Shown here piece after piece: positions 39 through 27,000 of a DNA stretch of 64,000 bases; within the stretch, counting starts at the first letter, position 1; every line of letters starts with the position of its first letter. This stretch comes from Laetmonice hystrix (Eukaryota). The translations under genes and the position numbers were made by a program. Below the pieces are notes generated by a model that searched no databases, was not told the origin of the DNA, and saw only the letters and a program-made list of their open reading frames with translations. The stretch spans positions 8,308,001 to 8,372,000 of the forward strand of contig OZ249443.1 of NCBI GenBank assembly GCA_965235115.1, in the 5' to 3' direction.

Positions 39-3000
39 GTCAGTGGGTGATGATCGTTAGTTCTCGTGAGTCTCCAGTGGGAGAAGTTATTGCCCAAACT
101 ATGCGATGTTTACCGTATCCCAGTATTGAGAGTTTACCGTAATAATGGGTTACCGTTTCAGTTCGAACAGTTAGCGTTTACGTGGATGGAGCGGCAGAAA
201 CAGGGTGGTACCTACAGCAGTCATCGGGCGCAAAACGAGAAACATGTAGTGGTCTGCGCTACAACCTTACACGCAGACACAATCATGGACTTTCTCAACG
301 AGTTCTACGCCCACCCAAAACTGCAGGTAAAATACAACCCTTCTCATGGCGGCTCAATAAATGGAACCGAACCTAGTATAGATAGGTCTTCCATGAGAAT
401 GTCTAGTTCTAACGTAGGCTTTCTTAATAATACGTGTGGCATGAACCAGCTTCCACGTGTACTTGTGAATTATTGGAGTGTAATACACCGATATCGTTGC
501 ATTCTGATTGTAGTTTGCTTCGCTTTATATGAGTACAGACATATTTACCAAGAATTGTGAGGGGCAAATTTGCACGTTAAGACTGTTTTACGTCTTTCTG
601 AAAGGCTTGTATACCATAATCAGGAATCATGTAGTCATTTCGAGGTCATGTTTTCTCGGATAAATCAAAGCTTTATGTGACAGACAGTTTGTGAACTCTG
701 TATGGAGGAACAGTGTTTGAGGTTCCTTTTGAGAATAATATTATATAAAAGGTCATTGTTTGCCTGAAAGTAGAAATCTCATTCTGTGCATGTTAACCTA
801 CTTTACTGGTTTCGCCTCCTTCAGATATTCATGTATCCACATTGTACATTGTGAGCTAACGTTTCTTGAGCTGACCTAAGTAACTATATAGAACTTGCGA
901 TTGGTTAGCTCAGCTCATCACCGAAGGGTGAAAGAATGGTCTGAAGCTTGCCGTGAAACCGTAAAGAGAGGTTGTGTGAAACTTTGAGCCATGTTTGAGC
1001 CCTTTCTGACCGCGAGCCTTGGAGAATGCCCCATCCCTATCCCATCGCCGCTTCAATCCTAGCTAACAAGTTCCAGCTCACAGCCAGTAACATCTAACCC
1101 AGTTGATACAGCCAGTTAATTCTCCCATACCGTGCATAAACCCAACTAAACCAGCATGTCGGATCGGATAGTTCTTTCTTACGACTATCTCGTTCATAGA
1201 GATGTCGCCAATCAGGTACGCTTCAGGAACATTTTCCGGTCTCCTACTACATACAAACAACAACGAAAACATCAACAACAAATTGGATGACGAATTGACA
1301 AGTATTTGATAAATCCGGAGCTTTTCATTAGATTAATAGAAGGTTATCAGTTGAATCATAATAACAGAAATTTTAACTGCTTAAAATGTTCTTTAATGCA
1401 AGACCATTCGTAGGTACGAATGACAAATGCTCTGTGAACCAGATGGTGAGAAAGACCAATGTTTCAAACGATCTATATTATGATTAACCAAGCATGCTAC
1501 CAAACCATAACAACTATAAACCCACCGCGTTCAACCTCAAGTATTACTAACCCCAGCCTGGGACTGGCCCCGGTATACGCACTCCTCAAGACAGCGGCAT
1601 ATCTGGTTTTATGTTGGCCCCGGGTGTAGGATTACTTCGTGGTGATGGTGTCGCCCTGTGAACTCAACAACACAATGAAAATGATCCTCCAGGTGCCCAT
1701 GTGGGCCTCCCGCGTCATTCAGATCCAAGGCTCCGTTCTGAAAGACTCAGACCTAGGTCGTTGTCGGTAAGTACCGTACATCTCCACTTAAGGCAACCCT
1801 GGCCGGGTTTTTGTTTTCGTCTTGCCAGGATTATTATGTGGTGTTAGTTTCACCCTGTGAGCTGGACCCAACCATGAAGATGATTCTACAAGTTCCAATC
1901 TGGGCTACACGAGTTATATATATCCAGGGGTCGGTCCTCAAGGATGCTGACCTCTCCAGATGTCGGTAAGAATCAAACACCTCACATACGCCACCTGGAG
2001 GCCAAATCTGGAACTACTTCCTATTAATTGCAACATACAGATGTGAACCCTCATGATCACTTACTGAGGCCATGCTGCCGTGAAAACGTTTGATTTATAC
2101 GATATGTAGGCCTGTGTGGTTTATTAGGAAGAGACGAGTTTGTCGGTTGTTACAAGTTTCCAATATTTTTTTTCATAGGAGAGAAACTATCAGACGCCCA
2201 CCTGGCACTATTTGTTATTCTCCCTGAGGTACTGTTGTGAAGTCGTTGATGAATGATGATATTTTACTGGCGCCACAGTTCCTGTATGCAGTGTTAATGA
2301 TGCCAGCAATGTTTGGTGTGTTTTACTGATATGTTACTGATGCTCGTTGATTAGGTAGGTTGGCTGCAGTGACGTGATATTTGTTCCAGAATGCAGGATG
2401 CAGAGGCCTGCTTTATACTGGCTGCCAGGAGCTATGTGGACAGGACCGCCGCAGTAAGTGGCAAGACCTGAATATTCTGAGTCACTCTTTAAATCATGTT
2501 TGTGTCTCAGTGCTTGACTGATGCATGTAGAAAAGATGATAGCCCGGAAATACTGGAAAAACATAATGTCGAAAGAAGACATCTTGGATCATGTTCGGTT
2601 TTACGCCAGTGTATAAGCTATAATATTACGTATTACGGGAGGTACTTTTGTTTGTCCATAATTTTGTACGTACAGCTCCGTGACTGACGTGACTGCAACA
2701 TATTGTATGGCCGTGCCAGTATGTAGTGACACACATGTATGTGCGTGACTGCAGTGACATCCCTATACTGTATGTGCGTGACTGTAGTGACATCCCTATA
2801 CTGTATGTGCGTGACTGTAGTGACATCCCTATACTGTATGTGCGTGACTGCAGTGACATCCCTATACTGTATGTGCGTGACTGCAGTGACATCCCTATAC
2901 TGTATGTGCGTGACTGTAATGACATCCCTATACTGTATGTGCGTGACTGTAATGACATCCCTATACTGTATGTGCGTGACTGTAATGACATCCCTATACT

Positions 3001-6000: not shown

Positions 6001-9000
6001 AACAACCTGTCCCTCAGTCCTCCAACCTCACTTCACTGATTGACACTGAGTTAGATACTCTGGGAGTCATCCACCCACAAATGGTCATGGCGGACAGTGT
6101 GAGTAGCCTCCTCTCCCTACAAAACAGTGACCTTTATAGGAATGGTCAATTTGAGAAATGGAAAAAGCCCTCAATACCCCTTGTTATTTTTGCCATTTTA
6201 TTTTGCGCCGTTCTATTTCTGTTCCGGAACGTGTAGAATAAGTGACAGTTACACAAGAAACAACGGAGGTGTCCTGTGTAGTCAGAATATGGGACAGAGA
6301 CAATAATTATTATTGTGAGTCTGAGAAAATGTACCTTTTCGAATATTTCCATGATCATCCCTGCCTTACTTGTACTGACCATCATGTCTTGACTAGTGTA
6401 CATTCAAGGTGGACTACAGGTGGTTTCACAGTTGGGTGTTATGACTACGACTAGAAAAGACTGGTTTGTCTTACATTGAATTACGTGATAAAATGTCAAA
6501 GGTGTATTGGTGTTGTTACGTATGCCACTGGCTATGGAGAATGGTATCATGTACATGTTAACATCTTGTTGCCTTGAGGTAGTATGTGGACCTTCGGTTC
6601 ACAGCTCCAGTGACGCCTAAAGCTTAATAATAGTATTATCAAGTTGTTTAAGATATTTAATCTTTCTAATACAGGTAATGATATTATTTCAGCCAAACAC
6701 CTGATACTTCATGGCTGACATAAACAAATTTTCAATAAACTTTCAATAATAACAATACTGGGCATTAAACACAAATATATGTGACCTTTTGGGGTTTTTT
6801 TTATCAAAGACTTCTTGATCATGAGATGAAAATAATATCGATCAAGATTAACTGCGAAGTTTAAGAATATGTTGGTAACTGACAGTCCCATACAGATAAC
6901 AGGCTCTGGTAGTACATCTTGACTACTCCGCTAATGAGTGCTTGTTTCATTTCGAATTTTAGTGCAAGCAAGTGTTTCCTTTGCTAATCATGGATTTCTT
7001 TTATCTTTTTATTTAGTGATGCACATATCGCAAGCTTTCGTTAAATCAGTCAAAAAGGACCATCATGTGACTAATGGGAACTATTAAAGAAAACTATAAC
7101 AAAGTTCTTGTTTTCCCTGAAGTCCTGTGACTTGGAACTGGAGTGTGATTGGTTGGTGGTTTCTAGGTGCTGTGGCGTTGGCCGTCAGACAGGACAAGAG
7201 AGGCACTAGGAATGAGATCATAGTGAAGGCAGAATACAACGCAACCCGTTCAGGTTCCCCAACAACCCGCTTCTTCTATAGATTCTCACCACTGTCACCA
7301 GATGGTGCTGCAGTCAATGAGACAATCATAATGGAATCAGCAATCATGACGTTTCGGCAAAGGCATTGGTTGAGGTGTCATCTGGTGATATTTTTTAGGT
7401 TATACATGTATTAGCATACAGTGCCGCCACCTAACGGTGAATCACAAGGCTGCATGTTTTATCGTTGACACCCGTGACATACGTATTGCACCTTTTACAT
7501 TAAAACTATAAAAGTGTACTTTCAATTCGTTTTATTTTAACACCTATAATGATTACATGTTACGTTACACACAATTCATAGTCCGTTTTTGTGAGACTAC
7601 GGCAAGGAGTAATAGAAAGTTCTGGTGGGGAAACCCGGTCGTTCCGACTTTGTATGAGAACTAGGCGATGAAGACTCTCATACTCTCAAAAATAGAAAAT
7701 TACAATTAATAAATAAATGACGTAAAACAAATTCAGTATTTTGTCTAATATTACTGGGTAGGTCGGTAATATCTTCAGAGATAAAGTTCAAGGGTATAGG
7801 GCATTTAAAACCATACTTCAATTGTAATTGACTTTTTTATTATAGTCATCCAGCCACTTTACCGCTTTCCTGGGATCTGCTGAAAAAATAGATCAAATGC
7901 ATGAGTTAATTTCTATTGTCACTTTTTCATTATAGCCATGACCTTGATTAGTTCATTGTTTACATTTTTAAAGCACAAAATAATTTCATTCGGTGAGTTT
8001 TCTTTTTTCAGGTTAGATGTCTCGGTGTATAATTTGTTTGTATGTGCCCCCTCCCCACTTGGCGTTCAGACGCAGAGCCGATCGATGAAGAAGAAAAATG
8101 TGCAGCACCTCGTGATGGTTTTAGAGGATTTACCTGGTCAATAGCCCAAACATTATCACAAACATTTTGGATGACATTTTTTTCAGATTCAACCTTTAAC
8201 CCTGGCAAACGCTGTAAGTTTGATCCTCTCTGGTTTGATCCAACGTGGGCGTCACACTAACCCAGAGATTCTAGAAACCAACAGCCCGTCTCTCATTCCC
8301 AACTCTGCTCATTGGGGTCTCTGCTGGTCGCTCCATTACAGCCACCAACAGAGGCCCGTATGAGGCGGATTTGGCAATGAGACCCGTACGACAGGTGCTG
8401 GCACCTGACGGGGCCTCTACGAACTGGGCCCCGAGCTATACTGGCACCCCACCTGGTGGTGGAATAGTGGGTGGGAATGCGATCACTGAGAGCGGGTTGC
8501 GGCATACTCACAGCTTTATTAATGCTTTACTCATTTCATAAACACTGGAGAACGTCCCAACGTTTGCTTATTCATGCTGTGTTTATCCAAGGACACTTGT
8601 ATTTAGTGCTACTGGAGGTATCTTTTTGCAGAGGAATCAGGATCTCTTGCTAATGACCGGATTTACCATTAGATTCTAGACCAGCTGGTGGTGTGTACAT
8701 GTATTGTCATTAAAGCCGGTCAATGCATTTCATTCCGCGTAGGTTGTGTGTGGAACGAAAGACATGTGCCTACTCTTCAATATGTAAATACATAGACACA
8801 AACGACACAAGTAATTAGTTTGCAAACACACCCACATGTTATATACATAGAAAGGGTTAAACCAAGCTGACTACAGTGCATTAATTATTTGGACGGATAA
8901 TCGGGACAGCAAGCAAATGTTAGTGGTAACAGTTTGAAATGTCAACGTGACCATAGAAGTGCTATCGTCATTGTGACGGTATGTGATGAGTTCGACACTA

Positions 9001-12000
9001 GCACCTTCTCCACTAACGTAACAATCTCATTCCAGGCTCTATATTTCAGAGTGACGGTGATTAATTTGTGAACGCTGAATGAATGAGAGAGTTTTTTGAT
9101 GAAAGGCCGTGAAGCCGGGGGTGTTAAAGTACACCTGGTGGTGACTGTTGGTATAATTATCTATCGTAGAGCGCACGACTCCACCCGAGGGCGAGTTCCG
9201 AATGATGGAGACTTGTTACGGGGCGTCTCATAGGTTACAGATGCCTGGTACTTATAGAAACATTCCTCACCGGTCCTTTCTAACTTTGATCTATCTTTTC
9301 GTTTTTACAAAGTGGTAGACTGCCAGGTAGTCAGATACTCTAGGTAGCTCTAGTTGTGCGTGTCTGTTCGGTGTATGGACATCATGTGTCGGGAAATCGT
9401 TCAACTATCCCGAATGATGAGAGCAATTGCCGACGGGACAATTGTATATCTGGTGTGACGTTTAGTGCTGTGGTTTGACACAGGGTGGCGCTCCTAACTC
9501 TGTCTTTAGCATTTGACCCGGATGTGGTTGACGTTTTCTTCATTGCGTCTCTGTCAAGTCGTGTCCGTTCGTTGCCACATTGCTTTTTTCACTTAGAGAT
9601 GTCTTTTCTGTACATCAAACGTGTCCATGTTAAAGGATTGTTTCAATGAAAAACATCCTTTATTGGGGGAACGCCCCTTAAAGGTAAATTAAGTGCACTT
9701 GTATTGAAATCTGGGCAGTTTGGAAGATGGCAGGATCACTGCAGAGAAATTGCAGTTTAAAAACTACTGAAAAAAAACCACTTTGAAAAGGCGTGTAAAA
9801 TGGAGTACCCCAATAGGCCTATACCCGGTCTATGCTTGTAAAATTGCGTAAAATGCAAGAATCTCGGCATCTTCCCATTGGTTTTCTCCCCGTTGATTTT
9901 CAATGATATTGTTCCCACAGGTAACATAGTGAAGTGTAAGTCACCCCACTTTCCCAGCTTCATTCGCCTCAATTCTACTTCCTGCTTATTACAACCTTTT
10001 ATGTTGCATGGGCCATCTTGACCTTTCACTTTGTACTTTATGAGAAATGAGACTGAGTTATGTGTTGTATAACAGAGCTCGGCAAAGCAACCCTTATACG
10101 TGTAATTCATTTGAACCAGCCTAAAAAAAACAACTTAACATTTGGAAACTTGGTAATGGAAGAGATAATAAGGAACTTGCCATCTTGTGTATTGAATTTC
10201 CTCCAAGCGATCGTCTCGACATTGTATGTTTTCATGTTGCATCCCTCACTCGGGATGTTACATCTGTCAAGGGTGTTTCATTTCCTTCTCCTTTCTCTTC
10301 AAGTGTCCTATTTGTTCTTTCTTTCTGTCTTTCTGCGGTCAGGCGTGGCCCAGTCGGAGGAGGAGACTATCCCTCCACCCCCTACCTGTCCTCAGTTAAA
10401 CCTGCCTATTGCCAACCATGGTAAAAAACAACCTTGACCTTTCACCTTGAGTATTTGTTGCATGTGTGATAGAAATCAGAACGTCTGAGTTTTGTTGAGA
10501 ATCGTCTCGATCTTACGGCTTGCTTCATTACGCCATCGTCAGTCTTATATTTCACCATACTTTGTCTCGGCCGCTTGTATATGTGTATAGGTACATTGAA
10601 TCGTGAATTTTCTTTGCCATAAATGACCTTGACTTGCAGTAAATGACCTTGACTTTGAAGTGCCTTACGTCATACACAGTGACACGCGCCTCGTTCGGGG
10701 GCAGCCAGTAACAACATGCCTTAACACTTTGTCACATGCGCAGGCCATGCACACACATCGAATTGCACTCCTCAACGTGGACCACAATCAACTTTTAACA
10801 AATAGGACAACACCCTTCCCCCAAATAAAATCTCTTTTTGAACTTGAATTAAGCAGCAAGCTAAGGAATAATGAAATGTCAATGCGGGCAGAAGAGATTT
10901 AAGAAGGCATGAACCCCCATCGTTTGCCTACAACTGATGATACCCAAATTGAACGTAACTCGACGGTCAGCGATACAAATTAATTTTCTGACATTACTTT
11001 TTATTATTATAATTTATTGATTTAAATAGGAAGCTTAAGGAGAAAGAAAACGATTGATAAAGACTCCATCCGTAGTGGAAGAAGTTCTATTAAGGAGAGT
11101 CCCGATGGCCAATCTTACTCACCAGACGGCAGCACGCCAACGATCGTGCTGCCACCTGGAGAAAACAACCAGGCTGCCATGGAAACAAGTATTTTCATTT
11201 TCCCATTGATTGGTTTGAGTTATTTATGGTTAAGACGTATAACTCTTGGATTGATGCGTGCCACGACAGTGTGTTTTCTCACCAGATTTTGGCCCAGTTG
11301 GTTTTAAGTGAGTTTAAGCCTGAGGTGTCTTGGCTTTGATCAGCGTTTGGAATGCACCACTAACATGTGTTCCATAGCAACAGCACGCAAGGATATCCAA
11401 ATACAGCATACAGTTGTAGGGTAGCCTATATGGACAAACCAAAAGGGGAAATAAGAAAAATATTGTTATTACTTAGAAGATAGGAGTTAGCCTATCCGGC
11501 GCCTTGGTGTATGAAATGAGACGCGGAGACGTTGGGTCAGCCGTGCCATGCAGTGCATAAGGGAAGGGAGTAAGGTGTCATACAGCCTCCTGACTAGCTA
11601 TTATCTCCCCTAACCCATCAGAGTATGAGCAATCCCAATTAATATTCTTCATTGCTAGCCCTGTGCATCCGCCTTAACCTGATCAGTCCTACCTAATCCA
11701 CAACCACACATGGATCCACCAGAGAGCTTTTAAGAATGGGCTAGTATAGCTGGTTGCCGTAACAACACTATTATATATTATAACATGTACTCAAGGTTTT
11801 TCCAATTTGGTTGTTTCCACACATTGACACAGCGTTCGTAGTGGCATGTATTGGGACATCTTCTGGTTCAACTCACGTGTTCATGCTTCACCTAAATCCT
11901 GATATTAAGGCATTGTTGACTGCACTGAGATGTGAAGTAGTGTATGAACAAAGAACCTGTTTGTGTCTTGCCAATCATGGTAGTCAAAACACGGTAGTGC

Positions 12001-15000
12001 TGCATTGTAGAATAATGCTTCTGTTGTTAGAAAATGGTTCATGTTCATTTACAGATATGATCAATAATGGGTTAATATAATACATAATCGTCAAGAGCTT
12101 TTTTTGCCAGACGAAAAATATTTGATTACCTTTTTAGTAGATATTCCTTAAACAACTGTAATAAAGTTAATATTGATTTAGTAATGATGTCGTATTCTTC
12201 AAGCGAGAACAAGGAAAGTATAAAACGACAGGATCGCGGCAGTTATTATTTTAGAAAAATATTTTTGTATAAATAATTGCAGCCCGTTTCAGATGGAAGT
12301 GAAAGCCATAAAGGGATATGTTTTATTCGGAGTCAGTCCTGACTAGACCAATAATGGCGAGGACGGGATTGGTAGTTTGGAGTGGTAGGTTGACGTCTGT
12401 TTCTATGGTTACAGGTTCTATGGTTTCCGACAAGGCACAGAAGATAGAACTACACCAAACCCACAGTAACAACCTCCTGGAGCTTCCCAAGGGAATGTCA
12501 CTGGCGGTCAGCAATTTGTCCAATTTGTCTTTTCCGATTTCATTTTAACAGTTTAAAGATCACGACAAAGATGTTTTTTGGGCAAAATCCTTCAGCATGC
12601 CAATTATGTATGATAAACTCTGCTAATCTAAAACCACAAAGATGAAATATAAAAGTAGATGCTTTGCTGAATGCATAAATGACTTTTGTGGACTCTCAAG
12701 GTTGATGAGGGCAGTGGGTTATGTTTGTAGAACCTACAGAAGAGGCCGAGTATCGCGCCGGTACCGGCGGTGTTAGAGGCTAACGGTATCGACATCACTG
12801 TGGAGTCGGAGACTGAGACAGAGAGCGACTCAGACCAAGGTGATGAGGAGGACACCGTGCCTTGGGGAACCCCCGTACCCGAGTGAGTATGACGTCATTA
12901 TCCACCCCATGAGATGAGGTTAGCGATATTTTGTTGAGACTGGTGTCAAGTAATTGACAGACACGCCGGCATTATGATACAGATGGTGTACCTATACAGA
13001 TCACAGAAACATCGAAATGCTGTACATGTATATATATATATTATGAGACCATGATATAGAGGACACAGACTGAAACTGGCTTCCAGGTTTTTTCATGCCA
13101 GACCACAGCCAACCTACATTATCAGTCTCAATTCTAGAAAAAAAACCAGGTTTGAGTTGTACCCAAATATGATTTTTTTACCAAGAACATTTTGATGGAT
13201 GTGACTGGTATGCAGAAGACGGTATATCGAATGTGTTCTGTTTTAGTAGCCAAGACAAGCTTGTGTAAGTATGACAGCCCGTCGTTGTTCAGTACAACAT
13301 TTCCATATAACGCAACATCACAATCACTAAACCAGTTAGGACAGTCATCGGCACCCTGAAATGATCAGTTACCTTTCCTAGAGCAAGCAAAAACACACAC
13401 ACACAACAAGCAGACAGACGATGTCATCCATTATTTTGTCACCGTCAGTGAAAACTTAATTTCCTCCATTATTCTATTTTAAAGTGTAGCCCGCTATTGA
13501 GTGTTGAATTATTTATACCGGGAGTGTATGTTTGGTAGTTGTCGAGGTATTCGACTTGCGTGGTGTGGTTTCTCCGGTAGAGATGCCTTGGTTTGTAACT
13601 GGTCCGATTTTAACTGTGCATGTATGAGTACACACGTACATTATACACACACGTATCTATACGTAACACTTGTATACTAGATGTTGGAGGTGTGCTTTAC
13701 ATAGTAACCCACACAAACCCACACATACAAAATCAATATGCTCAAAGTCATGTTAAATAAACAGTTCTGTTTGCATGACATTTTAGCCGACGTTTTTTAT
13801 AACTAGTTTGTTAAAGTGGTTGCACAGATATTAGTTCTTACCAACAATAAATGTCAGATTTTTCTTTAAATAAACAGTGCATGATGGATTTAATTTTGGA
13901 ACTTTGGATGTGCATGAATGTATATGACAGGGGTGTTGTTTTTCACAATATACACACTGTGTTACCATGGATACATAACTATGTATTGTAGAGGATGGGA
14001 GGTGCCAGTATTGGGTTTTCATTAGTCAAGTGTTAATGTTGATCCTTTCTCCGCCATCCTAGCCCTATACCAGTGTGTGGAGCAGGTGGCAGGTACTATA
14101 ACTGGCCCAATGAAAACCCAACTATATACTGGCTGGCCATTCAGGTATGACCCCAAGATCAGGCCTAGGGAGTCTTCTGAAAACATTTTCTAAAGTTTTC
14201 TGCCTATATAAAGCACTAGAAACAAAACGGTCAATAGTTGTTTGATCCATAAAAGAGAAATGCGACTTACATACTGTACTTCAAGGGTCACCAGAGAAAA
14301 TACCGACGGAATATTTTAAGACAATGAGAGCGATAAACCACAGTGCGCTTATTTCATTTTCTCAAGTATGATTACTATTATAGCGTAACGGTCCTATGGA
14401 ACTTCAGCTTGGGACACCCCATAGCACAACTAAACACATCGTGGTTGTCCTAATATTTAGTGTTTCTCTTTATAATTGCTTATTGAACATTATTGACTGC
14501 GCTTCTGGCAGTCATGTGCCAACACATGGAAGAAATAATGAAGATAGTTATTGATATTGTTATCTGTTAACTGATCACTTTGACAATATCACACTTTTCC
14601 ATGGTTAGAGATTAAAGAATTGCAAGTATCTGTTATTATGACTACTTTAGATAGTTTATTGTTCCACATAATTTATGCCGTTTCTTTTCATTTTTTGCAT
14701 TATTGTTTCATTGTTTTGCTAGCCGTGACCTGGAGATGATAACATTACGTCATATTTTTGTTTTTATTAATAATATAACTGATGGTTCAAAGTTGTGTTT
14801 TTTCCAAACAGTTATGTGAAAGGCTTTCCCCCTACTCCCCCCTACATTGGCTGCAGCCCGAGGCTATGTCACCTACTGAAGAACAAACAGCCATTGTGTT
14901 GCCTACAGCTTTCAAAGGTAGCTATGGCAAACACGGCAAGGTCAACGCATATCGCCATGGCGCCAAGGTCAACGAAGGTCATAGAACGGAAAATTTAGAA

Positions 15001-18000
15001 GTTTGGGTGTAACTGTGTTTCAGCTGGTTACATGGGTATAGCTTAAGCGATCCAGTGGGAACTTTACGTTGACTTCGAACGGCACAGTTCTTGGTGACAT
15101 GTTGATTCTTGGAGAGTCCTTCCTTTCTGTCAGCTTTTTATTTTACCAAGCCTTCGGTTAGTTGGACTGTTTGACTGCAATCACAAGGGAGAAACGATTC
15201 AATGAACTGCCGAATGAAATACAAACCTAGAGGATATGTACACATCAGTGCATTATGTATCATGAAAATATTGTTACTGTAAGTCAATAGGACAGAGGAA
15301 ATGGGTTGTCCCTTGTGAAGGCGGCTAAAACAGATCTACTGCTTTCTGCACTTGCATGGTGAGCACATGTGCCCCCTCCCACGACCCCCACCGACGCTTT
15401 CAGTTTCCGTATCCTTCCTTCACAGGGCAAGGTCCCGTAGTAGTAAGTCGCGGTGGCACCAGGTGGCAGCGCGCGCGCTTATGTGTCACAGTGTATGTTG
15501 CCTCAGTGGGTGTTGATAGGGCGGCCGGGCATGCCTCATCACTCATCTCTATATTTTCCTCTTAGTTATGTGCGCGGGTTCCCACCCACAACTCCTTACA
15601 TCGGTACAAGTCCAACCGTCGTACACTTGCTGCGCGACAAGCGACCGTTGTGTTGCCTGCAACTGGCCAAGGTACAAACTGCCAGACTTATCATAAAATT
15701 ATCGATATCTTCTCAGAATATTTTACATATAATAATTGGCATTATGATTTGCATTAAAAACAATACCGCGCTGAAGATTGCTTCGAATTTGCAAAATTTT
15801 GAGCGTTTGTTTTTTCTCCCTTTTTGATCTATATTGAAGACCCCATGCAACCTTTTCCCTTTTTCTGCATGACTGTTATGGTTAACAAAAATGATACTAA
15901 TCATGGCATATAGCAACCTCCCAACCAACCAACCACTACCGTACTTTGTGACCAGCAAGACGTCTTGTATTGAATTCCAGCATGGGTGTTTTAACATACC
16001 CTGAACCCATGGCGAACAAGCTATTCAAGTTATTTTGACGATATAAAAGCAGTTTACGCGGCAAGTTACTGAGAAGAAGGGGGGGGGATACGAATAAAAA
16101 GAATATTGAAAAGACTACACTGACATACGGTATATGGAATATTATAGAAAATATAATGACAGCTGGTAGAGTTGAGAGCATCAGTAGTCAGTCATGAGGT
16201 GTCATATCTGTTTTGAGACTACCAAGGGGAACAGAGAAGGCGGAAGTTGGAGGTTAGATCAGCTACCTTGTTTTGTAGAAGCTTCGGAAACCCTTACTTC
16301 AATGTTCCTGGGGTTTGAGAAGATATGCACCTGTGCGTCCTTAAAGATGCGAATGTTTGGTTTTTATCAAAGATTGACTGGAATAAGTGTTTTTTGGCAC
16401 TGTTTGTGGTTGCGCCAAATGCATGTACGCCTGGTGGTTAAGTGACTTGTGTCTCGATGTTCTCCTTTCATGTTCTCCTCACACTGCGCCATACCTAATG
16501 TATACCCCTACACGTATCTTATCTGCTCTGCCTCGTTTGCGTGTGATAAAAAGATTTCTACATGTCCACTATTACTGAGTGACCCAGTCACAGACCTGTG
16601 TGACTGAAAATACAAACCTCTGAATAAATACAGAATTAAATGTTATTAACGTAAATGAGAGTTAACGGGTCGACCCAGACAAAACACTTTGTATAGAAAG
16701 GAAAATAATTGACAAATTGACAACAGTTTTGATCACCATCCTCACATTTGTCAATAGGTTGCATTTATAATTAATTATAGTATACTAATAATAAATCGAT
16801 GGCTATGTAAGAAGTAGGGTAAAAACCGTGAAACTTTAGAAAGACGGTTTTTGAGTGTATTTTTGTTGGTATTGGCAGGCTTGTGAACACTGCAGTTTTA
16901 AACACGCCAAGGAATACAACTGGCCGAATCGGGCCATCATTGTGGCGGCAGATTATGCAAGTAATGGTCTCTATAACTTCATCGTGCCATTACGCTCGCA
17001 CGCCCGGCCTAAACACACGCTCAACCCAATCGTACTACTACTAGAGCGACCGTAAGCAACATCTTATTGATTACTTTTAAACATGTATCTCATTAATTAC
17101 TTGGCTTGATGAATTCCGGAAATTTGAAATTGCCATTCCACGCGCAGATTCATTGAGGATAAAAGCAGAATGTGCAAGCTGACAGAAAAGTTAAGAATTT
17201 TAAAGATTCTGTAAAATTTCAGGGCCACCTTTTCTTTTATAATTATAAATGATTGTTTGTTGACCTCTCTGACCTAATGACACGGGTGTCAGAGAACAAC
17301 CTTTGCTGACCGTCATTTCGTGTTCTACCGACAGGCCGGACCAGAGTTTCCTAGAGACGATTTGTTACTTTCCCATGGTTTACTGGATGATCGGATCTAT
17401 AGACTGGTTAGTATCCACAGTTTAAGTCCTCAGTGGGACCAGGGGCCAGGGTCCTGGTAGCTCACGTTAATGACGCCCCAGTATAACTATCTCGGCGTTG
17501 TGTCGAGGTGGTCAGTTTAACCTCTAGCGGAAACCGGAGTACCGGATGATAACCACCGATCTGCAGCAAGTGTCTTTTTACGTTAGAATAATTTGACCTT
17601 CAGGCATATTAGATAACGGCGAGAATTACCACAGCATTATGGTAAAGCTATGAGGAGTAATTAAGTTTATACGTGTACAATGTTACTTAAGAGCAAACAC
17701 TTTTTTCGAGGAAACCTTATAAAACAAGATAATAATGCCGGTTTAATGTTTGGATACTCAGTTTAGATGACCTGCTACGTGCGGGTATCAACCTGGCCGA
17801 TAACGTGGTGATTGTGAACAAGGAGAGTTCTAACTCAGCCGAGGAGGACACCTTGGCCGACTGTAACACCATCGTGGCTGTACAGACTATATTCAGGTGG
17901 GTTATATCCTTAACAGAAAGCTTCTATATCCCTGACTGAAAACTGCTATATAACTTACAGAAAACTGCTATATCCCTAACAGAAAACTTCTATATCCTGA

Positions 18001-21000: not shown

Positions 21001-24000
21001 CCTGTCACAGTGCCCGGTTCTCACGGTCCTTCCGTCTCTATGTATACGTGTAGGCAGGTGATTCCCATCCCCCGGTACCGGCTAGGGGTCCTCCTGTCAC
21101 AGTGCCCGGTTCTCACGGTCCTTCCGTCTCTATGTATACGTGTAGGCAGGTGATTCCCATCCCCCGGTACCGGCTAGGGTCCTCCTGTCACAGTGCCCGG
21201 TTCTCACGGTCCTCTCGTCTCTATGTATAGGCCTAGGTGTAGGCAGGTGATCCCCATCCCCCGGTACCGGCTAGGGGTCCTCTTGTGACACTGACAGTGC
21301 CCGGTTCTCACGGTCCTCTCGTCTCTATGTATAGGCCTAGGTGTAGGCAGGTGATCCCCATCCCCCGGTACCAGCTAGGGGTCCTCTTGTGACAGCGCCC
21401 GGTTCTCACGGTCCTCCCGTCTCTATGTATGCGTGTAGGCAGGTGGTCCCCATCCCCCGGTACCGGCTAGGGGTCCTCCTGTGACAGTGCCCGGTTCTCA
21501 CGGTCCTCTCGTCTCTATGTATATGTGTAGGCAGGTGATCCCCATCCCCCGGTACCGGCTAGGGGTCCTCCTGTGACACTGACAGCGCCCAGTTCTCACG
21601 GTCCTCTCGTCTCTATGTATACGTGTAGGCAGGTGATTCCCATCCCCCGGTACCGGCTAGGGGTCCTCCTGTGACAGTGCCCGGTTCTCACGGTCCTCTC
21701 GTCTCTATGTATACGTGTAGGCAGGTGATTCCCATCCCCCGGTACCGGCTAGGGGTCCTCCTGTGACAGTGCCCGGTTCTCACGGTCCTCTCGTCTCTAT
21801 GTATAAATTTTCAGAAAGAGAAGGAGCGAGGGTCACATCTTTACTACATGTTCCGGCTGCCGTTCGCTGCCGGTAATGTGTTCAGTGCCAGTATGCTGGA
21901 CACACTTCTATACCAGGTACGACTTCAGGTCGGGTACTTCTATACACGCTTTGTACGGGGACATGGAATCTTTAACAAATTCTGCTCTAAAAGTTCGAAG
22001 ACAATTCATGTGTCTTTAAAAATCCCTTTGGTCCTTGTAAGCTTTTGTCTTTTGTTAAAGTTAAGCTGAGGTCAACTTAATGCATGTTATCCTACCCCGA
22101 CGGACCGTTTGGATGGAGGAGATGCCGTTAAAAACTTGTATTTTATCATCAAGAAATCCTGTATAATATATATGTCTATAGTAGTGGATGTAAAACCAAC
22201 CTGTGAGTATTAATCTTAATTTGTTTTTTTAACCCAGGCCTTTGTAAAGGATTACCTCATTACATTTGTACGTCTCCTGCTCGGCATCGACCAAGCTGTG
22301 GGCTCAGGCCACCTCTCCTGTGTGAGTGCAACCATTATCATTTTGCCATTCTCACTATGTGCCAACTAATTTACTCAACTCTGTGGGTAAGGAGAAAACG
22401 AGAGTGTACAGCAGGATGCGGTATAATCTTTCCTGCTGATCAGAATTCTGGAACCCCCTGTAGATATCAACTTCACCCTGTACCTGGAACCCCCTGTAGA
22501 TATCAACTTCACCCTGTACCTGGAACCCCCTGTAGATATAAACTTCACCCTGTACCTGGAACCCCCTGTAGATATAAACTTCACCCTATACCTGGAACCC
22601 CCTGTAGATATCAACTTCACCCTGTACCTGGAACCCCCTGTAGATATCAACTTCACCCTGTACCTGGAACCCCCTGTAGATATCAACTTCACCCTGTACC
22701 TGGAACCCCCTGTAGATATCAACTTCACCCTGTACCTGGAACCCCCTGTAGATATCAACTTCACCCTGTACCTGGAACCCCCTGTAGATATCAACTTCAC
22801 CCTGTACCTGGAACCCCCTGTAGATATCAACTTCACCCTGTACCTGGAACCCCCTGTAGATATAAACTTCACCCTGTACCTGGAACCCCCTGTAGATATC
22901 AACTTCACCCTGTACCTGGAACCCCCTGTAGATATAAACTTCACCCTGTACCTGGAACCCCCTGTAGATATCAACTTCACCCTGTACCTGGAACCCCCTG
23001 TAGATATCAACTTCACCCTGTACCTGGAACCCCCTGTAGATATCAACTTCACCCTGTACCTGGAACCCCCTGTATAAACTTCACCCTGTACCTGGAACCC
23101 CCTGTATAAACTTCACCCTGTACCTGGAACCCCCTGTAGATATCAACTTTACCCTGTACCTGGAACCCCCTGTATCAACTTCACCCTGTACCTGGAACCC
23201 CCTGTAGATATCAACTTTACCCTGTACCTGGAACCCCCTGTAGATATCAACTTTACCCTGTACCTGGAACCCCCTGTATCAACTTCACCCTGTACCTGGA
23301 ACCCCCTGTATAAACTTCACCCTGTACCTGGAACCCCCTGTATCAACTTCACCCTGTACCTGGAACCCCCTGTATAAACTTCACCCTGTACCTGGAACCC
23401 CCTGTAGATATCAACTTCACCCTGTACCTGGAACCCCCTGTAGATATCAACTTCACCCTGTACCTGGAACCCCCTGTATAAACTTCACCCTGTACCTGGA
23501 ACCCCCTGTATCAACTTCACCCTGTACCTGGAACCCCCTGTATAAACTTCACCCTGTACCTGGAACCCCCTGTATAAACTTCACCCTGTACCTGGAACCC
23601 CCTGTATCAACTTCACCCTGTACCTGGAACCCCCTGTAGATATCAACTTCACCCTGTACCTGGAACCCCCTGTAGATATCAACTTCACCCTGTACCTGGA
23701 ACCCCCTGTAGATATCAACTTCACCCTGTACCTGGAACCCCCTGTAGATATCAACTTCACCCTGTACCTGGAACCCCCTGTAGATATCAACTTCACCCTG
23801 TACCTGGAACCCCCTGTAGATATCAACTTCACCCTGTACCTGGAACCCCCTGTATAAACTTCACCCTGTACCTGGAACCCCCTGTAGATATCAACTTCAC
23901 CCTGTACCTGGAACCCCCTGTAGATATCAACTTCACCCTGTACCTGGAACCCCCTGTAGATATCAACTTCACCCTGTACCTGGAACCCCCTGTAGATATC

Positions 24001-27000
24001 AACTTCACCCTGTACCTGGAACCCCCTGTATAAACTTCACCCTGTACCTGGAACCCCCTGTAGATATCAACTTCACCCTGTACCTGGAACCCCCTGTATA
24101 AACTTCACCCTGTACCTGGAACCCCCTGTAGATATCAACTTCACCCTGTACCTGGAACCCCCTGTATAAACTTCACCCTGTACCTATGTTTCAGATGAAG
24201 ATCAGCAAGGATGAGTTATGGATCCGGACGTACGGGCGCCTGTACCAGAAGCTATGCTCGACAACGTGTGAGATCCCTATCGGAATCTACCGGACCCAGA
24301 CCCAACTGTCGTCCGACTCCTCCTCGGTAAGTTATCCCCACCCCCACGGTCCCATCACAGAATAACATACTCTGTGGTCCCATCACCCGGCAGTCGTCAA
24401 GTTTTCATCGTCAAATCACATAATGGCGGGTGTGGGTGAAAAGGGTAGGCCAGGGACCGAGGGCCGCAGGGGATATCAAGAATTTCATCACCCAAGGACA
24501 TCCCACGTCTCGACTATAAGAGATGAACCCTTGCTCAGGAATCACCAGGTCATTTCTCAAGGGATCGTACCAAGTCGTTTCCCTGTCAGAACCTCCGGTT
24601 TTTAATTAGCATCGTCATCGACACCATCTATGGCATGAGTTTTATCCAGTAGCGAATCCAGGGGCTGGGTCGGGGTTTTCATCCCATTCGGGAGGTAAAA
24701 ATAATGGAACCCAAATGTAACCTTCATCAGTCCATCAAAATCCACATCGGTTCATTCATTATTAACATCATCACCGTTAGCCGGGAGAGAGATTTGTGAT
24801 GAGTTAAACCTGACTAAACACTTACCGTGTGTTTGTCAGAGTGAGCGGCGACCGTCGTTCTTTGCCTCTGTAAGTACACACACGTCTTCGTACCACACAC
24901 CAACTTGCCTGACTCAAACCTCTTCCCCCGGGAACGATCTCTGGTAGGGAGACCCAGTATCGGCATGATGTCAGTACCTTACAGTCATCACAGCCATGGC
25001 AGTCTACCTGCTAAAGACCTTCCAGTGTATTCTACTCCACAAACATTGCATTGCTTTTCCTTGGATCTAAATCACATTGGAGTTTCATTGCGAATGCCTT
25101 ACCCAGAAAGGGAACGCAAGTTTGGAATGCTGCCTGCAACACTTGGGAGAAGGGGAGGGCGTATTGCGATACCATTTTATTCCTAAGTGACCAATCCCAA
25201 TACCCCTTTCAAGTGAAGTCATGTGCACCTGCCAATGAAAATGATTCTCTCATAATCGGATGGCGTCGTTTTCTCGAAGCACCTCCGTGCATGGCTCGTG
25301 GTGATTATGTCATGTTTTTAAAGTTAAGATGTATCATTTGTTCTGGGGTGGGGGTCAATTAGTGTTGCTGTCGGTTTGTTCCATGATGAAAGACCATGGC
25401 GCTGACCATGATCCTGTTTCTCAAAACTAAAGTTCTTGCTTAAGCTTAAGATTGATCTGAGCACTTGTGATTGGCTGGTCTTCTGTGACTAGCCAATCAG
25501 AAGCTTTAGCTGGGCCGAGATGACGATAAACCTTGCCTCGTGTACCGCAAGCATGTGACACTCGGCTGAGACCTGCTACATGGACCAAACTGTTATCATA
25601 ATCTGTGTCACTGAATGCTATCTTCATATTGGCGACCACTCGTTAGGTCGCTCCAAACTCCGCAGCCTTTATTGTGTTTCTGTCAGGGGGGGGGGGATTA
25701 CATGTCAGTTTGTGACATGTCTTGCTCTTCTAGAACTCGTAACTTACTCATCAGTCTTTTCATTCGGCGACCATGAGCATGATATACTACATAACGTTAA
25801 TTACGGAGTCTATCATGACGTATGTATCGATATTTAGTGAGTTTAGCAATATTGAATAGTATTGGTTATTACTGAACTCAATGTGAGTTATTAATATTAG
25901 TACTTAGTGAACTCGGTATGACGTATCAGTGGTAACCAAACATGGCATCAGGTAACAACGTCCGTGCTCACTGACTTCAGCAGCAGAAGTTTACCTTTAA
26001 CAAATGTTCCTTTCCCGACACATCGCATTGCGCAAATCAAGTCCTGTCGATTATTGGGCTACATTGACTCCCTTAAAGGGCCACCAGCATTTAGGAAGCA
26101 TGTACTTTACCTTTGCTAATGTTGTTTCTAAACTATACATTTCTGTGAATATGGTATACTTTATTTTTACTCTCTTTTCTTTCCGTCATAATGAAGATAA
26201 TGGTTTGTGATTCACAACCCTGTAAGATAATTAGCATATACTGCCTATTTATTGGTTTCAGCTGTGGGATGCTAAAGAAAGTTATATAAACTTTCCACTT
26301 TAATTCGTTTTGAGAACAACTCAATGGTTCTGTCTTCGTATACCTCTATTTTACCCGCTCTTTTCTACTTTATCCCACTGTTAATGTTGTAAAGTCGACA
26401 ATCTTGCTTGAAAGCAAAGCGAAAGAAATGTGTAATGAGAGTTGGAATCGTATGCCGCCGTGGTAGACGGAGTAAAGTCGGCCGTGTTGTAGACAACTCT
26501 GTGTTTGACCACTTCAATGTGCTCCTTGTTTGGCCTTGATTTTTGACTCTGTTCGTGCATGTGTTTCGTCCCTCCTCGGAAGCTGTTGGGCTCAGAGCAG
26601 AGTCCCGACCATAAAGTCATTGGGCGCAAAAGCCTAAAGCGTAGACGGATGCATGGCAGCTTGTACGTGAGTATAAAACTACTGTCTCGCCTCGAGCCTT
26701 CGCCACAAAACACCACGCAACACATGCCTACAGTCAGCTCGCACAGAATATTGATGTAATGATACCATCCACGTCAGTGGGCACTTTCTGTGTCAGTCTT
26801 CAACACACAAAGTTAACAATCGAAATTTGTTACAAAATAACCGAGTTTGAAGCAGCGGCAATCGTCCATTAAACGTATTGAGGCTACTGTGGTTGTTGAA
26901 GCGTTCTGTGGTAGACTTCTTCTCGCAGCTGCATGTGTGCCGTTTTGCTCTTTGTTTGCCCTGTCTTTTCTTTTCTATCCTTTATGTTGCTTTCTCTTTA

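What the first reader, a model, noticed from the sequence alone, without database searches (positions are those of the whole stretch)
1630..1965. Mutually exclusive duplicated exon pair in Slo2 RCK1, separated by a 62-nt intron
Seen: two 137-nt exons with identical phases and intact splice sites, 37/46 aa identical. The intron between them (1767-1828) is only 62 nt, and its only branch-like CTTAA (about 1786-1790) is about 23 nt from the upstream donor. Including both shifts the frame. Established: steric donor-to-branch-point clash plus NMD is a known way to enforce mutual exclusion (alpha-tropomyosin type), and such cassettes are well known in Drosophila slo (BK). I do not know of this pair in vertebrate KCNT1/2. 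Inference: two RCK1 variants differing at Y/F, D-P/N-N and Y/Q next to the residue equivalent to human KCNT1 R398.
Basis: partly seen in the sequence, partly recalled or inferred. Interest (0 to 1): 0.8.

Follow-up and report, generated by a model that had tools for sequence, protein, structure and literature searches.

The report
Alternative exon pair in Slo2 channel
A worm-like invertebrate's sodium-activated potassium channel gene (Slo2/KCNT) has two tandem, interchangeable versions of one 137-base exon; both are kept intact in a distant relative, so it is very likely a real either/or splice switch, an ordinary kind of feature in a gene where it was not recorded.

Summary
Exons A1 (1630-1766) and A2 (1829-1965) are both 137 nt, in the same phase, with AG/GT splice sites. 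They share 37/46 residues and 93/137 bases, and 33 of the 44 differences are at third codon positions. They encode human KCNT1 residues 401-446 in RCK1, including the R428 hotspot.

The main new evidence is an orthologous locus in a distant relative (L007). It keeps both copies intact with splice sites, while the introns no longer align. A2 is 46/46 identical there. A1 is 39/46 identical and keeps its signature, including Gln in place of an almost invariant Tyr (human Y431). A1 is therefore a coding exon under purifying selection, not a decayed duplicate.

The pair is lineage-restricted. An exon tree puts the duplication before the split of these two species. No copy was found in the other sampled loci or in annotated isoforms of nemerteans, other annelids, a brachiopod or molluscs.

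Productive mRNA must use exactly one copy, because 137 = 3n+2. It is not conserved: the same intron is 541 nt in L007.

No RNA data cover this gene. The scan has noted similar pairs in other genes of this genome, but not this one.

The parts
162..326 (+). Constitutive upstream exon of Slo2/KCNT (RCK1 beta-A/alpha-A). It ends in phase 0 and holds the Lys equivalent to human KCNT1 R398.
   Evidence: Translation and splice context. Aligns to human KCNT1 346-400. 98% identical at protein level in L007.
1630..1766 (+). Exon A1, the divergent copy, 137 nt. It encodes [45 protein letters not shown](R). Gln replaces the near-universal Tyr at position 31.
   Evidence: Ortholog in L007 at 10028-10164 with 39/46 residues, intact AG/GT, pN 0.09 against pS 0.75. 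The only SNP seen, 1755 A>G, is synonymous.
1767..1828 (+). 62-nt intron between the two copies. All A residues are at 1796 or before, followed by a 30-nt A-free G/T/C tract up to the acceptor.
   Evidence: The alternative haplotype differs by small indels and C>T changes in the tract and introduces no A. The orthologous intron in L007 is 541 nt.
1829..1965 (+). Exon A2, the canonical copy, 137 nt. It encodes [45 protein letters not shown](R).
   Evidence: 46/46 residues identical in L007 at 10706-10842, with 19 synonymous and 0 non-synonymous differences. Higher Pfam Slo-like_RCK score than the A1 version, 84.5 against 76.8 bits.
2390..2453 (+). Constitutive downstream exon (beta-D of RCK1, [21 protein letters not shown]). 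It is in frame only after exactly one of A1 or A2.
   Evidence: Ortholog in L007 at about 12553-12618.

Best explanation
A1 and A2 are a mutually exclusive exon pair made by tandem duplication of one exon of the single Slo2/KCNT gene. The duplication happened in the lineage leading to this animal and the species of locus L007. Each mRNA that can make a channel carries exactly one copy, because each exon is 137 nt (3n+2). Double inclusion puts a stop 5 codons into A2, and double skipping also shifts the frame, so such mRNAs should be removed by nonsense-mediated decay.

The two products differ in the beta-B/alpha-B/beta-C/alpha-C segment of the RCK1 N-lobe. A2 is the canonical version and is frozen at protein level. 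A1 evolved quickly after the duplication and is now also constrained. Its conserved signature is Y3F, P14N, I24M, T27S and Y31Q, the last being human Y431, three residues after the epilepsy hotspot R428.

Shown: the anatomy, the frame logic, purifying selection on both copies, conservation in a second species, and the lineage restriction. Inferred: that both copies are spliced into mRNA, that A2 is the default and A1 the regulated minor form, and that the isoforms gate differently. In this species the 62-nt intron may additionally block A1-to-A2 splicing sterically; that layer is not conserved.
For: Gene identity:
- The spliced translation matches human and chicken KCNT1 RCK1 at E about 1e-48 and Pfam Slo-like_RCK.
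- The remaining exons are collinear with annotated KCNT2-like proteins through 28926.

Pair anatomy and frame.

Selection between the paralogs: 30 synonymous against 14 non-synonymous differences, pN 0.13 against pS 0.98. Binomial P about 2e-10 against neutrality.

Ortholog locus L007:
- Both copies are intact with AG/GT sites.
- A1 orthologs show 22.5 synonymous against 9.5 non-synonymous differences, P about 3e-8.
- A2 orthologs show 19 synonymous and 0 non-synonymous differences.
- Introns between the species do not align at all, while A1 aligns at 77%.

Timing and polymorphism:
- The tree gives (A1w,A1L) support 97/92. Together with the identical A2 copies they form a clade at 96/89 that excludes all other taxa.
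- Both exon SNPs in other haplotypes are synonymous.

Precedent: in C. elegans, 14 of 19 non-3n mutually exclusive clusters depend on NMD, including slo-1 exons 10a/10b (PMC4165533).
Against: There is no RNA evidence. Neither exon was found in any RNA run. No transcript-derived protein of this species or of the L007 species turned up.

Only two species carry the pair, so conservation rests on one comparison.

A1 has the poorer polypyrimidine tract and replaces an otherwise near-invariant Tyr. It could be rarely used or restricted to a few cells.

Functional difference between the isoforms is pure inference.
Confidence: 0.75

Rival explanations
1. Steric exclusion is the operative mechanism, as in alpha-tropomyosin or OGDH. 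The branch point for A2 lies so close to the A1 donor that U1 and U2 cannot assemble on the 62-nt intron, so A1 can never be joined to A2. The frame shift is only a back-up.
For: All A residues of the intron are 29 nt or less from the donor, followed by a 30-nt A-free tract. The proposed vertebrate threshold is about 50 nt (PMC7969005). The intron is far shorter than the six other introns of this gene that I measured, which are 163 nt or longer. The length is nearly kept (61 or 62 nt) in the other haplotype.
Against: The orthologous intron in L007 is 541 nt, with a consensus-like TTAAT 27-28 nt from the acceptor, and the pair is maintained there anyway. The minimal intron or donor-to-branch distance of this animal is unknown. 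C. elegans excises introns down to about 40 nt. In C. elegans the sterically blocked clusters are all 3n exons, whereas this pair is 3n+2.
Confidence: 0.4
2. A1 is a non-coding regulatory 'poison' exon or an unused relic. Only A2 ever makes protein, and inclusion of A1 merely triggers NMD to lower channel output.
For: A1 has a weaker pyrimidine tract (0.60 against 0.75) and a lower Pfam score than A2. It evolves faster at protein level. No annotated protein anywhere carries an A1-like exon.
Against: A poison exon or relic needs no amino-acid conservation. Yet A1 keeps an open frame, the exact length and 39/46 residues across a divergence where synonymous sites are saturated and introns do not align. 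The excess of synonymous change has P about 3e-8.
Confidence: 0.1
3. Choice between A1 and A2 is directed by competing RNA secondary structures, with a docking site and selector sequences as in Dscam, 14-3-3 or ATE1.
For: A 12-nt perfect complement links intron 1072-1083 to A2 at 1855-1866. A 14-nt 86% complement links 1263-1276 to the A2 pyrimidine tract at 1807-1820.
Against: Matches of this length are about what chance gives in 2 kb; my estimate is 0.1 to 2 expected. No intronic block is conserved between the two species. L007 shows no analogous pairing to its A1 or A2.
Confidence: 0.1

Closest known systems
C. elegans slo-1 (BK) exons 10a/10b and the filarial slo-1a/slo-1f isoforms
   Same: It is a homologous pair of equal-length 3n+2 exons (113 nt each) in the RCK1 region of a Slo-family K+ channel. 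The exons are mutually exclusive and partly policed by NMD (PMC4165533). In Brugia the isoforms differ in pharmacology and are sex-specific (PMC6779273).
   Different: The paralogue differs: Slo1/BK rather than Slo2/KCNT. The part of RCK1 differs too: around residues 560-567 of Bma-SLO-1 in nematodes, against the first Rossmann strands and helices here (human KCNT1 401-446). The origin is independent, and here the pair is confined to one lineage.
Alpha-tropomyosin exons 2/3 and OGDH exons 4a/4b (steric, distant branch point)
   Same: The branch adenosines of the intervening intron are 25-46 nt from the upstream donor and are followed by a long A-poor pyrimidine tract (PMC7969005). Here all A residues are 29 nt or less from the donor, followed by a 30-nt A-free tract.
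   Different: In those genes the arrangement is conserved over hundreds of millions of years and restricts intron size. Here the relative has a 541-nt intron with a normally placed branch-like site. Branch points were not mapped here.
Vertebrate KCNT1/KCNT2 (Slack/Slick) and annotated invertebrate Slo2 genes
   Same: It is the same gene family and the same exon boundaries. The exon is 137 nt in other lophotrochozoans too, and the DY[YF]VV...RVIYIQGS...RC[RK] block is highly conserved.
   Different: Every vertebrate, arthropod, mollusc, nemertean, brachiopod and other annelid model examined has a single version of this exon. The Batillaria genomic locus has one copy. From my own knowledge, the known Slack isoform diversity lies in alternative N-terminal first exons, not in RCK1.

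Membership tests
Slo2 / KCNT Na+-activated K+ channel gene | RCK1 sequence specifically closest to KCNT1/2 rather than BK | tested here: met
   phmmer against PDB gives KCNT1 at E 8e-49 over 122/122 residues, against BK at E about 1e-8 to 1e-9. Pfam PF22614 scores 77-85 bits.
Slo2 / KCNT Na+-activated K+ channel gene | Remaining exons collinear with full-length KCNT-like proteins (RCK1, BK_channel_a, RCK2) | tested here: met
   tblastn of the Lineus, Tubulanus and Dimorphilus proteins gives about 20 ordered exons from 150 to 28926.
Slo2 / KCNT Na+-activated K+ channel gene | Activation by intracellular Na+ | not testable with these tools
   This needs electrophysiology.
Mutually exclusive exon pair from tandem exon duplication | Adjacent homologous exons of the same length and phase with intact splice sites | tested here: met
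   Each is 137 nt, starts in phase 0, and is flanked by AG and GTAAG.
Mutually exclusive exon pair from tandem exon duplication | Double inclusion or double skipping is non-productive | tested here: met
   137 = 3n+2. Both included gives a stop after 5 codons of A2. Both skipped shifts the frame.
Mutually exclusive exon pair from tandem exon duplication | Both copies maintained by purifying selection across species | tested here: met
   L007 keeps both copies. A1 has pN 0.09 against pS 0.75. A2 has pN 0 against pS 0.60. The introns do not align.
Mutually exclusive exon pair from tandem exon duplication | Transcripts carry one or the other, never both | not testable with these tools
   No RNA run holds either exon. 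The laid runs are DNA.
Steric-hindrance (alpha-tropomyosin type) exclusion | Donor-to-branch-point distance below the spliceosome's minimum | tested here: inconclusive
   All intron A residues are 29 nt or less from the donor. The threshold in this animal is unknown and the branch point is unmapped.
Steric-hindrance (alpha-tropomyosin type) exclusion | The arrangement is conserved wherever the pair is conserved | tested here: not met
   The intron is 541 nt in L007, with TTAAT 27-28 nt from the acceptor.
Competing RNA structure (docking/selector) exclusion | Conserved intronic elements with mutually exclusive complementarity | tested here: not met
   There are no conserved intronic blocks. Inverted repeats are at chance level and are not shared.

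The most novel reading that the evidence does not exclude
A1 is a regulated, cell-type-specific Slo2 isoform whose conserved Tyr-to-Gln change sits on strand beta-C, three residues from the R428 hotspot where R428Q causes gain of function in people. On this reading the change resets Na+ or voltage sensitivity of the channel. It would be a natural, evolution-tested gating variant pointing to a role for this strand of RCK1 in coupling the gating ring to the pore.
Probability: 0.2. Interest if true: 0.5.

Novelty: new member of a known kind. Interest (0 to 1): 0.35.

Why it matters
Mutually exclusive exons are a standard way for invertebrates to diversify ion channels, so the mechanism is not new. 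I found no record of such a pair in any Slo2/KCNT gene, either in the literature searches or in the public gene models sampled.

The swapped segment is the RCK1 N-lobe stretch that holds R428, one of the commonest KCNT1 epilepsy sites. The alternative exon replaces a neighbouring Tyr that is Tyr (occasionally Phe) in every annotated Slo2 protein examined. Comparing the two isoforms by electrophysiology would be a cheap way to ask what this strand contributes to gating.

For annotation, gene models of this genome should carry two isoforms here, and probably two more at the RCK2 pair noted in passing.

Tried and rejected
- **RNA evidence.** Two run searches, one per exon, found only three DNA runs of one sample. 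Laying them showed continuous genomic contigs and no exon junctions.
- **Transcript-derived proteins.** Searches with UP+A1+DN, with A1 alone and with a full-length Lingula-like model restricted to this region found no A1-containing transcript product. They found only one genomic ORF, P0241, which led to L007.
- **Wider phylogenetic spread.**
  - The isoforms sampled from the clusters of Lineus, Tubulanus, Owenia, Dimorphilus, Lingula, Octopus, Mercenaria, Pecten, Haliotis and Mya (up to 15 per cluster) all carry one canonical exon.
  - Contigs L006, L010 and L013 show no second copy within 1.7 kb, 0.64 kb and 0.2 kb upstream of their single exon.
  - The JGI metagenome scan gave only a chance match.
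- **A mollusc-like exon with Asn at the same Tyr** (L005, L008) looked like a possible independent pair. The related Batillaria locus has a single copy, so it is most simply a lineage substitution.
- **P0121's two matched stretches** are an identical internal repeat in a Lingula-like model, so they are an artefact and not an alternative exon.
- **Conserved RNA pairing** was not found.
- **Contact mapping** of the substitutions in the solved KCNT1 structures was not possible. No tool returns coordinates, so the secondary-structure labels rest on the alignment and on general knowledge of the RCK fold.

Full report
**What is there**

The + strand of the window's first 29 kb carries most of a Slo2/KCNT gene. 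An upstream exon (162-326) ends in phase 0.

Two 137-nt segments follow, at 1630-1766 (A1) and 1829-1965 (A2). Each is preceded by AG and followed by GTAAG. A downstream exon follows at 2390-2453.

Spliced as UP+A1+DN or UP+A2+DN, the translation aligns end to end with human KCNT1 residues 346-467 at E about 1e-48. It aligns far better with KCNT1 than with BK, and it matches Pfam Slo-like_RCK.

The duplicated exon corresponds to human 401-446, the second strand to third helix of the RCK1 Rossmann fold. It contains the equivalent of R428. The equivalent of R398 is a Lys in the upstream exon.

**Is the duplication real and more than chance?**

The copies share 93/137 bases and 37/46 residues. 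tblastn of one against the window finds the other at E about 1e-23 and nothing else. The whole 627-Mb assembly holds only these two copies, in one Slo2 locus.

Of the 44 base differences, 33 are at third codon positions. By Nei-Gojobori counting, 30 are synonymous and 14 non-synonymous (pS 0.98, pN 0.13). The binomial P against neutral expectation is about 2e-10. Both copies have therefore been under protein-level constraint for most of the time since they separated.

**Comparative evidence**

A search with A1 alone found a single protein, a 55-residue genomic ORF (P0241) with the A1 signature VIQIQGS. Its 3.7-Mb ENA contig (L007) carries the orthologous locus:

| Feature | Position in L007 |
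|---|---|
| UP exon | 8492-8656 |
| A1-like exon | 10028-10164 |
| A2 exon | 10706-10842 |
| DN exon | about 12553-12618 |

All four have AG/GT sites.

The two species are far apart. Synonymous sites are saturated or nearly so (pS 0.60-0.77), and blastn finds no alignable intron sequence, only the exons.

Against that background:
- A2 is 46/46 identical, with 19 synonymous and 0 non-synonymous differences.
- A1 is 39/46 identical, with 22.5 synonymous and 9.5 non-synonymous differences, P about 3e-8.
- A1 keeps its exact length, its open frame and five signature differences from A2: Y3F, P14N, I24M, T27S and Y31Q.

A relic or purely regulatory exon would not behave like this.

In other haplotypes of this species, the only SNPs in UP and A1 are synonymous, while the flanking introns carry many SNPs and indels.

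**Age and spread**

A maximum-likelihood tree of the 46-residue exon from 27 sequences groups the two A1 copies (support 97/92). It joins them with the two A2 copies in a clade (96/89) that excludes every other animal sampled. This agrees with two substitutions shared by all four copies and rare elsewhere: Val at position 7, unique to these four in the 27-sequence set, and Val at position 36, shared there only with Owenia. The A1 stem branch is long (0.32). The duplication is thus older than the split of these two species but younger than their separation from the other sampled lophotrochozoans, and A1 changed quickly before settling.

Consistent with this:
- Only the canonical exon appears in the sampled annotated isoforms of Lineus, Tubulanus, Owenia, Dimorphilus, Lingula, Octopus, Mercenaria, Pecten, Haliotis and Mya, or in arthropods and vertebrates.
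- The Batillaria gene has one copy.
- Three other short contigs show no second copy upstream.

From its nearest relatives the animal looks like an annelid, as earlier notes on this genome also say. I did not establish its identity.

**How exclusion works**

The part that follows directly from the sequence is the frame. Each exon is 3n+2. A1+A2 reads into a stop 5 codons into A2, and skipping both also shifts the frame. Retaining the 62-nt intron meets a stop at the A1 donor.

Only single-inclusion mRNAs can encode the channel, and the others are expected NMD substrates. This is the commonest arrangement among non-3n exclusive clusters in C. elegans, including slo-1 exons 10a/10b (PMC4165533).

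- The intron is 62 nt.
- Every A in it lies 29 nt or less from the donor.
- The last 30 nt before the acceptor contain no A.
- The vertebrate threshold is put at about 50 nt (PMC7969005).

However, the relative keeps the pair with a 541-nt intron and a normally placed branch-like TTAAT. Steric block is therefore at most a species-specific addition, and its threshold in this animal is unknown. I found no sign of competing RNA structures.

**What the isoforms may do (inference)**

- A2 is the canonical form, with the higher Pfam score and 100% protein conservation.
- A1 has the somewhat poorer pyrimidine tract in both species. It replaces a Tyr that is Tyr, or Phe in a few bivalves, in every annotated Slo2 examined.
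- That Tyr is three residues after the Arg whose R428Q change is an established gain-of-function epilepsy variant.
- By alignment, and from my own knowledge of BK channels, this strand corresponds to the one carrying BK E399 of the Mg2+ site, at the face of RCK1 towards the membrane domain.
- A shift in gating set-point is therefore a sensible hypothesis, but nothing here tests it.

**Limits**

Conservation rests on one second species.

**Verdict**

This is a real, conserved, lineage-restricted alternative exon pair. It is a new example of a familiar mechanism in a gene family where it had not been recorded. The scan has noted about 25 similar pairs in other genes of this genome, which fits a genome rich in such switches.

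Noticed in passing
window 14812-14917 and 15566-15671 (+): There is a second tandem exon pair in the same gene, at the start of RCK2 (YV[KR]GFPP..PYIG..LCCLQL). Each exon is 106 nt (3n+1), with AG and GT flanks. The copies share 27/38 aligned residues, and differences by codon position are 10/7/27. This is probably another mutually exclusive pair. Batillaria has a single copy, and L007 does not reach this far.
   Followed up: partly
L007 7838-8440: Four partial tandem copies (165-nt period) of the 5' two-thirds of the upstream exon lie just before the real exon in the relative's contig. They carry changes such as HAVVRATT. They could be real decaying duplicates or an assembly effect.
   Followed up: no
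L005 660-797 and L008 773-910: A gastropod-like Slo2 exon has Asn instead of the conserved Tyr (VINVQGS), the same position where A1 has Gln. The related Batillaria locus has one canonical copy, so this looks like a lineage substitution rather than a second pair.
   Followed up: partly
window about 2740-3000 and beyond (+): A tandem repeat of a roughly 31-nt unit (gtgcgtgactg[ct]a[ga]tgacatccctatactgtat) lies in the intron after the downstream exon.
   Followed up: no
window about 23067-24179: A short-period tandem array gives repeated minus-strand hits RVKFIQG. It coincides with a strong negative GC skew (-0.375 over 22001-24000) inside a Slo2 intron.
   Followed up: no
I did not test its use.
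   Followed up: no
P0121; P0242-P0246: Public models with internal repeats exist. A Lingula-like model repeats identical segments, including part of this exon. Horse KCNT2 models of about 1550 residues score as if they carry two copies. These are probably annotation or assembly artefacts.
   Followed up: no
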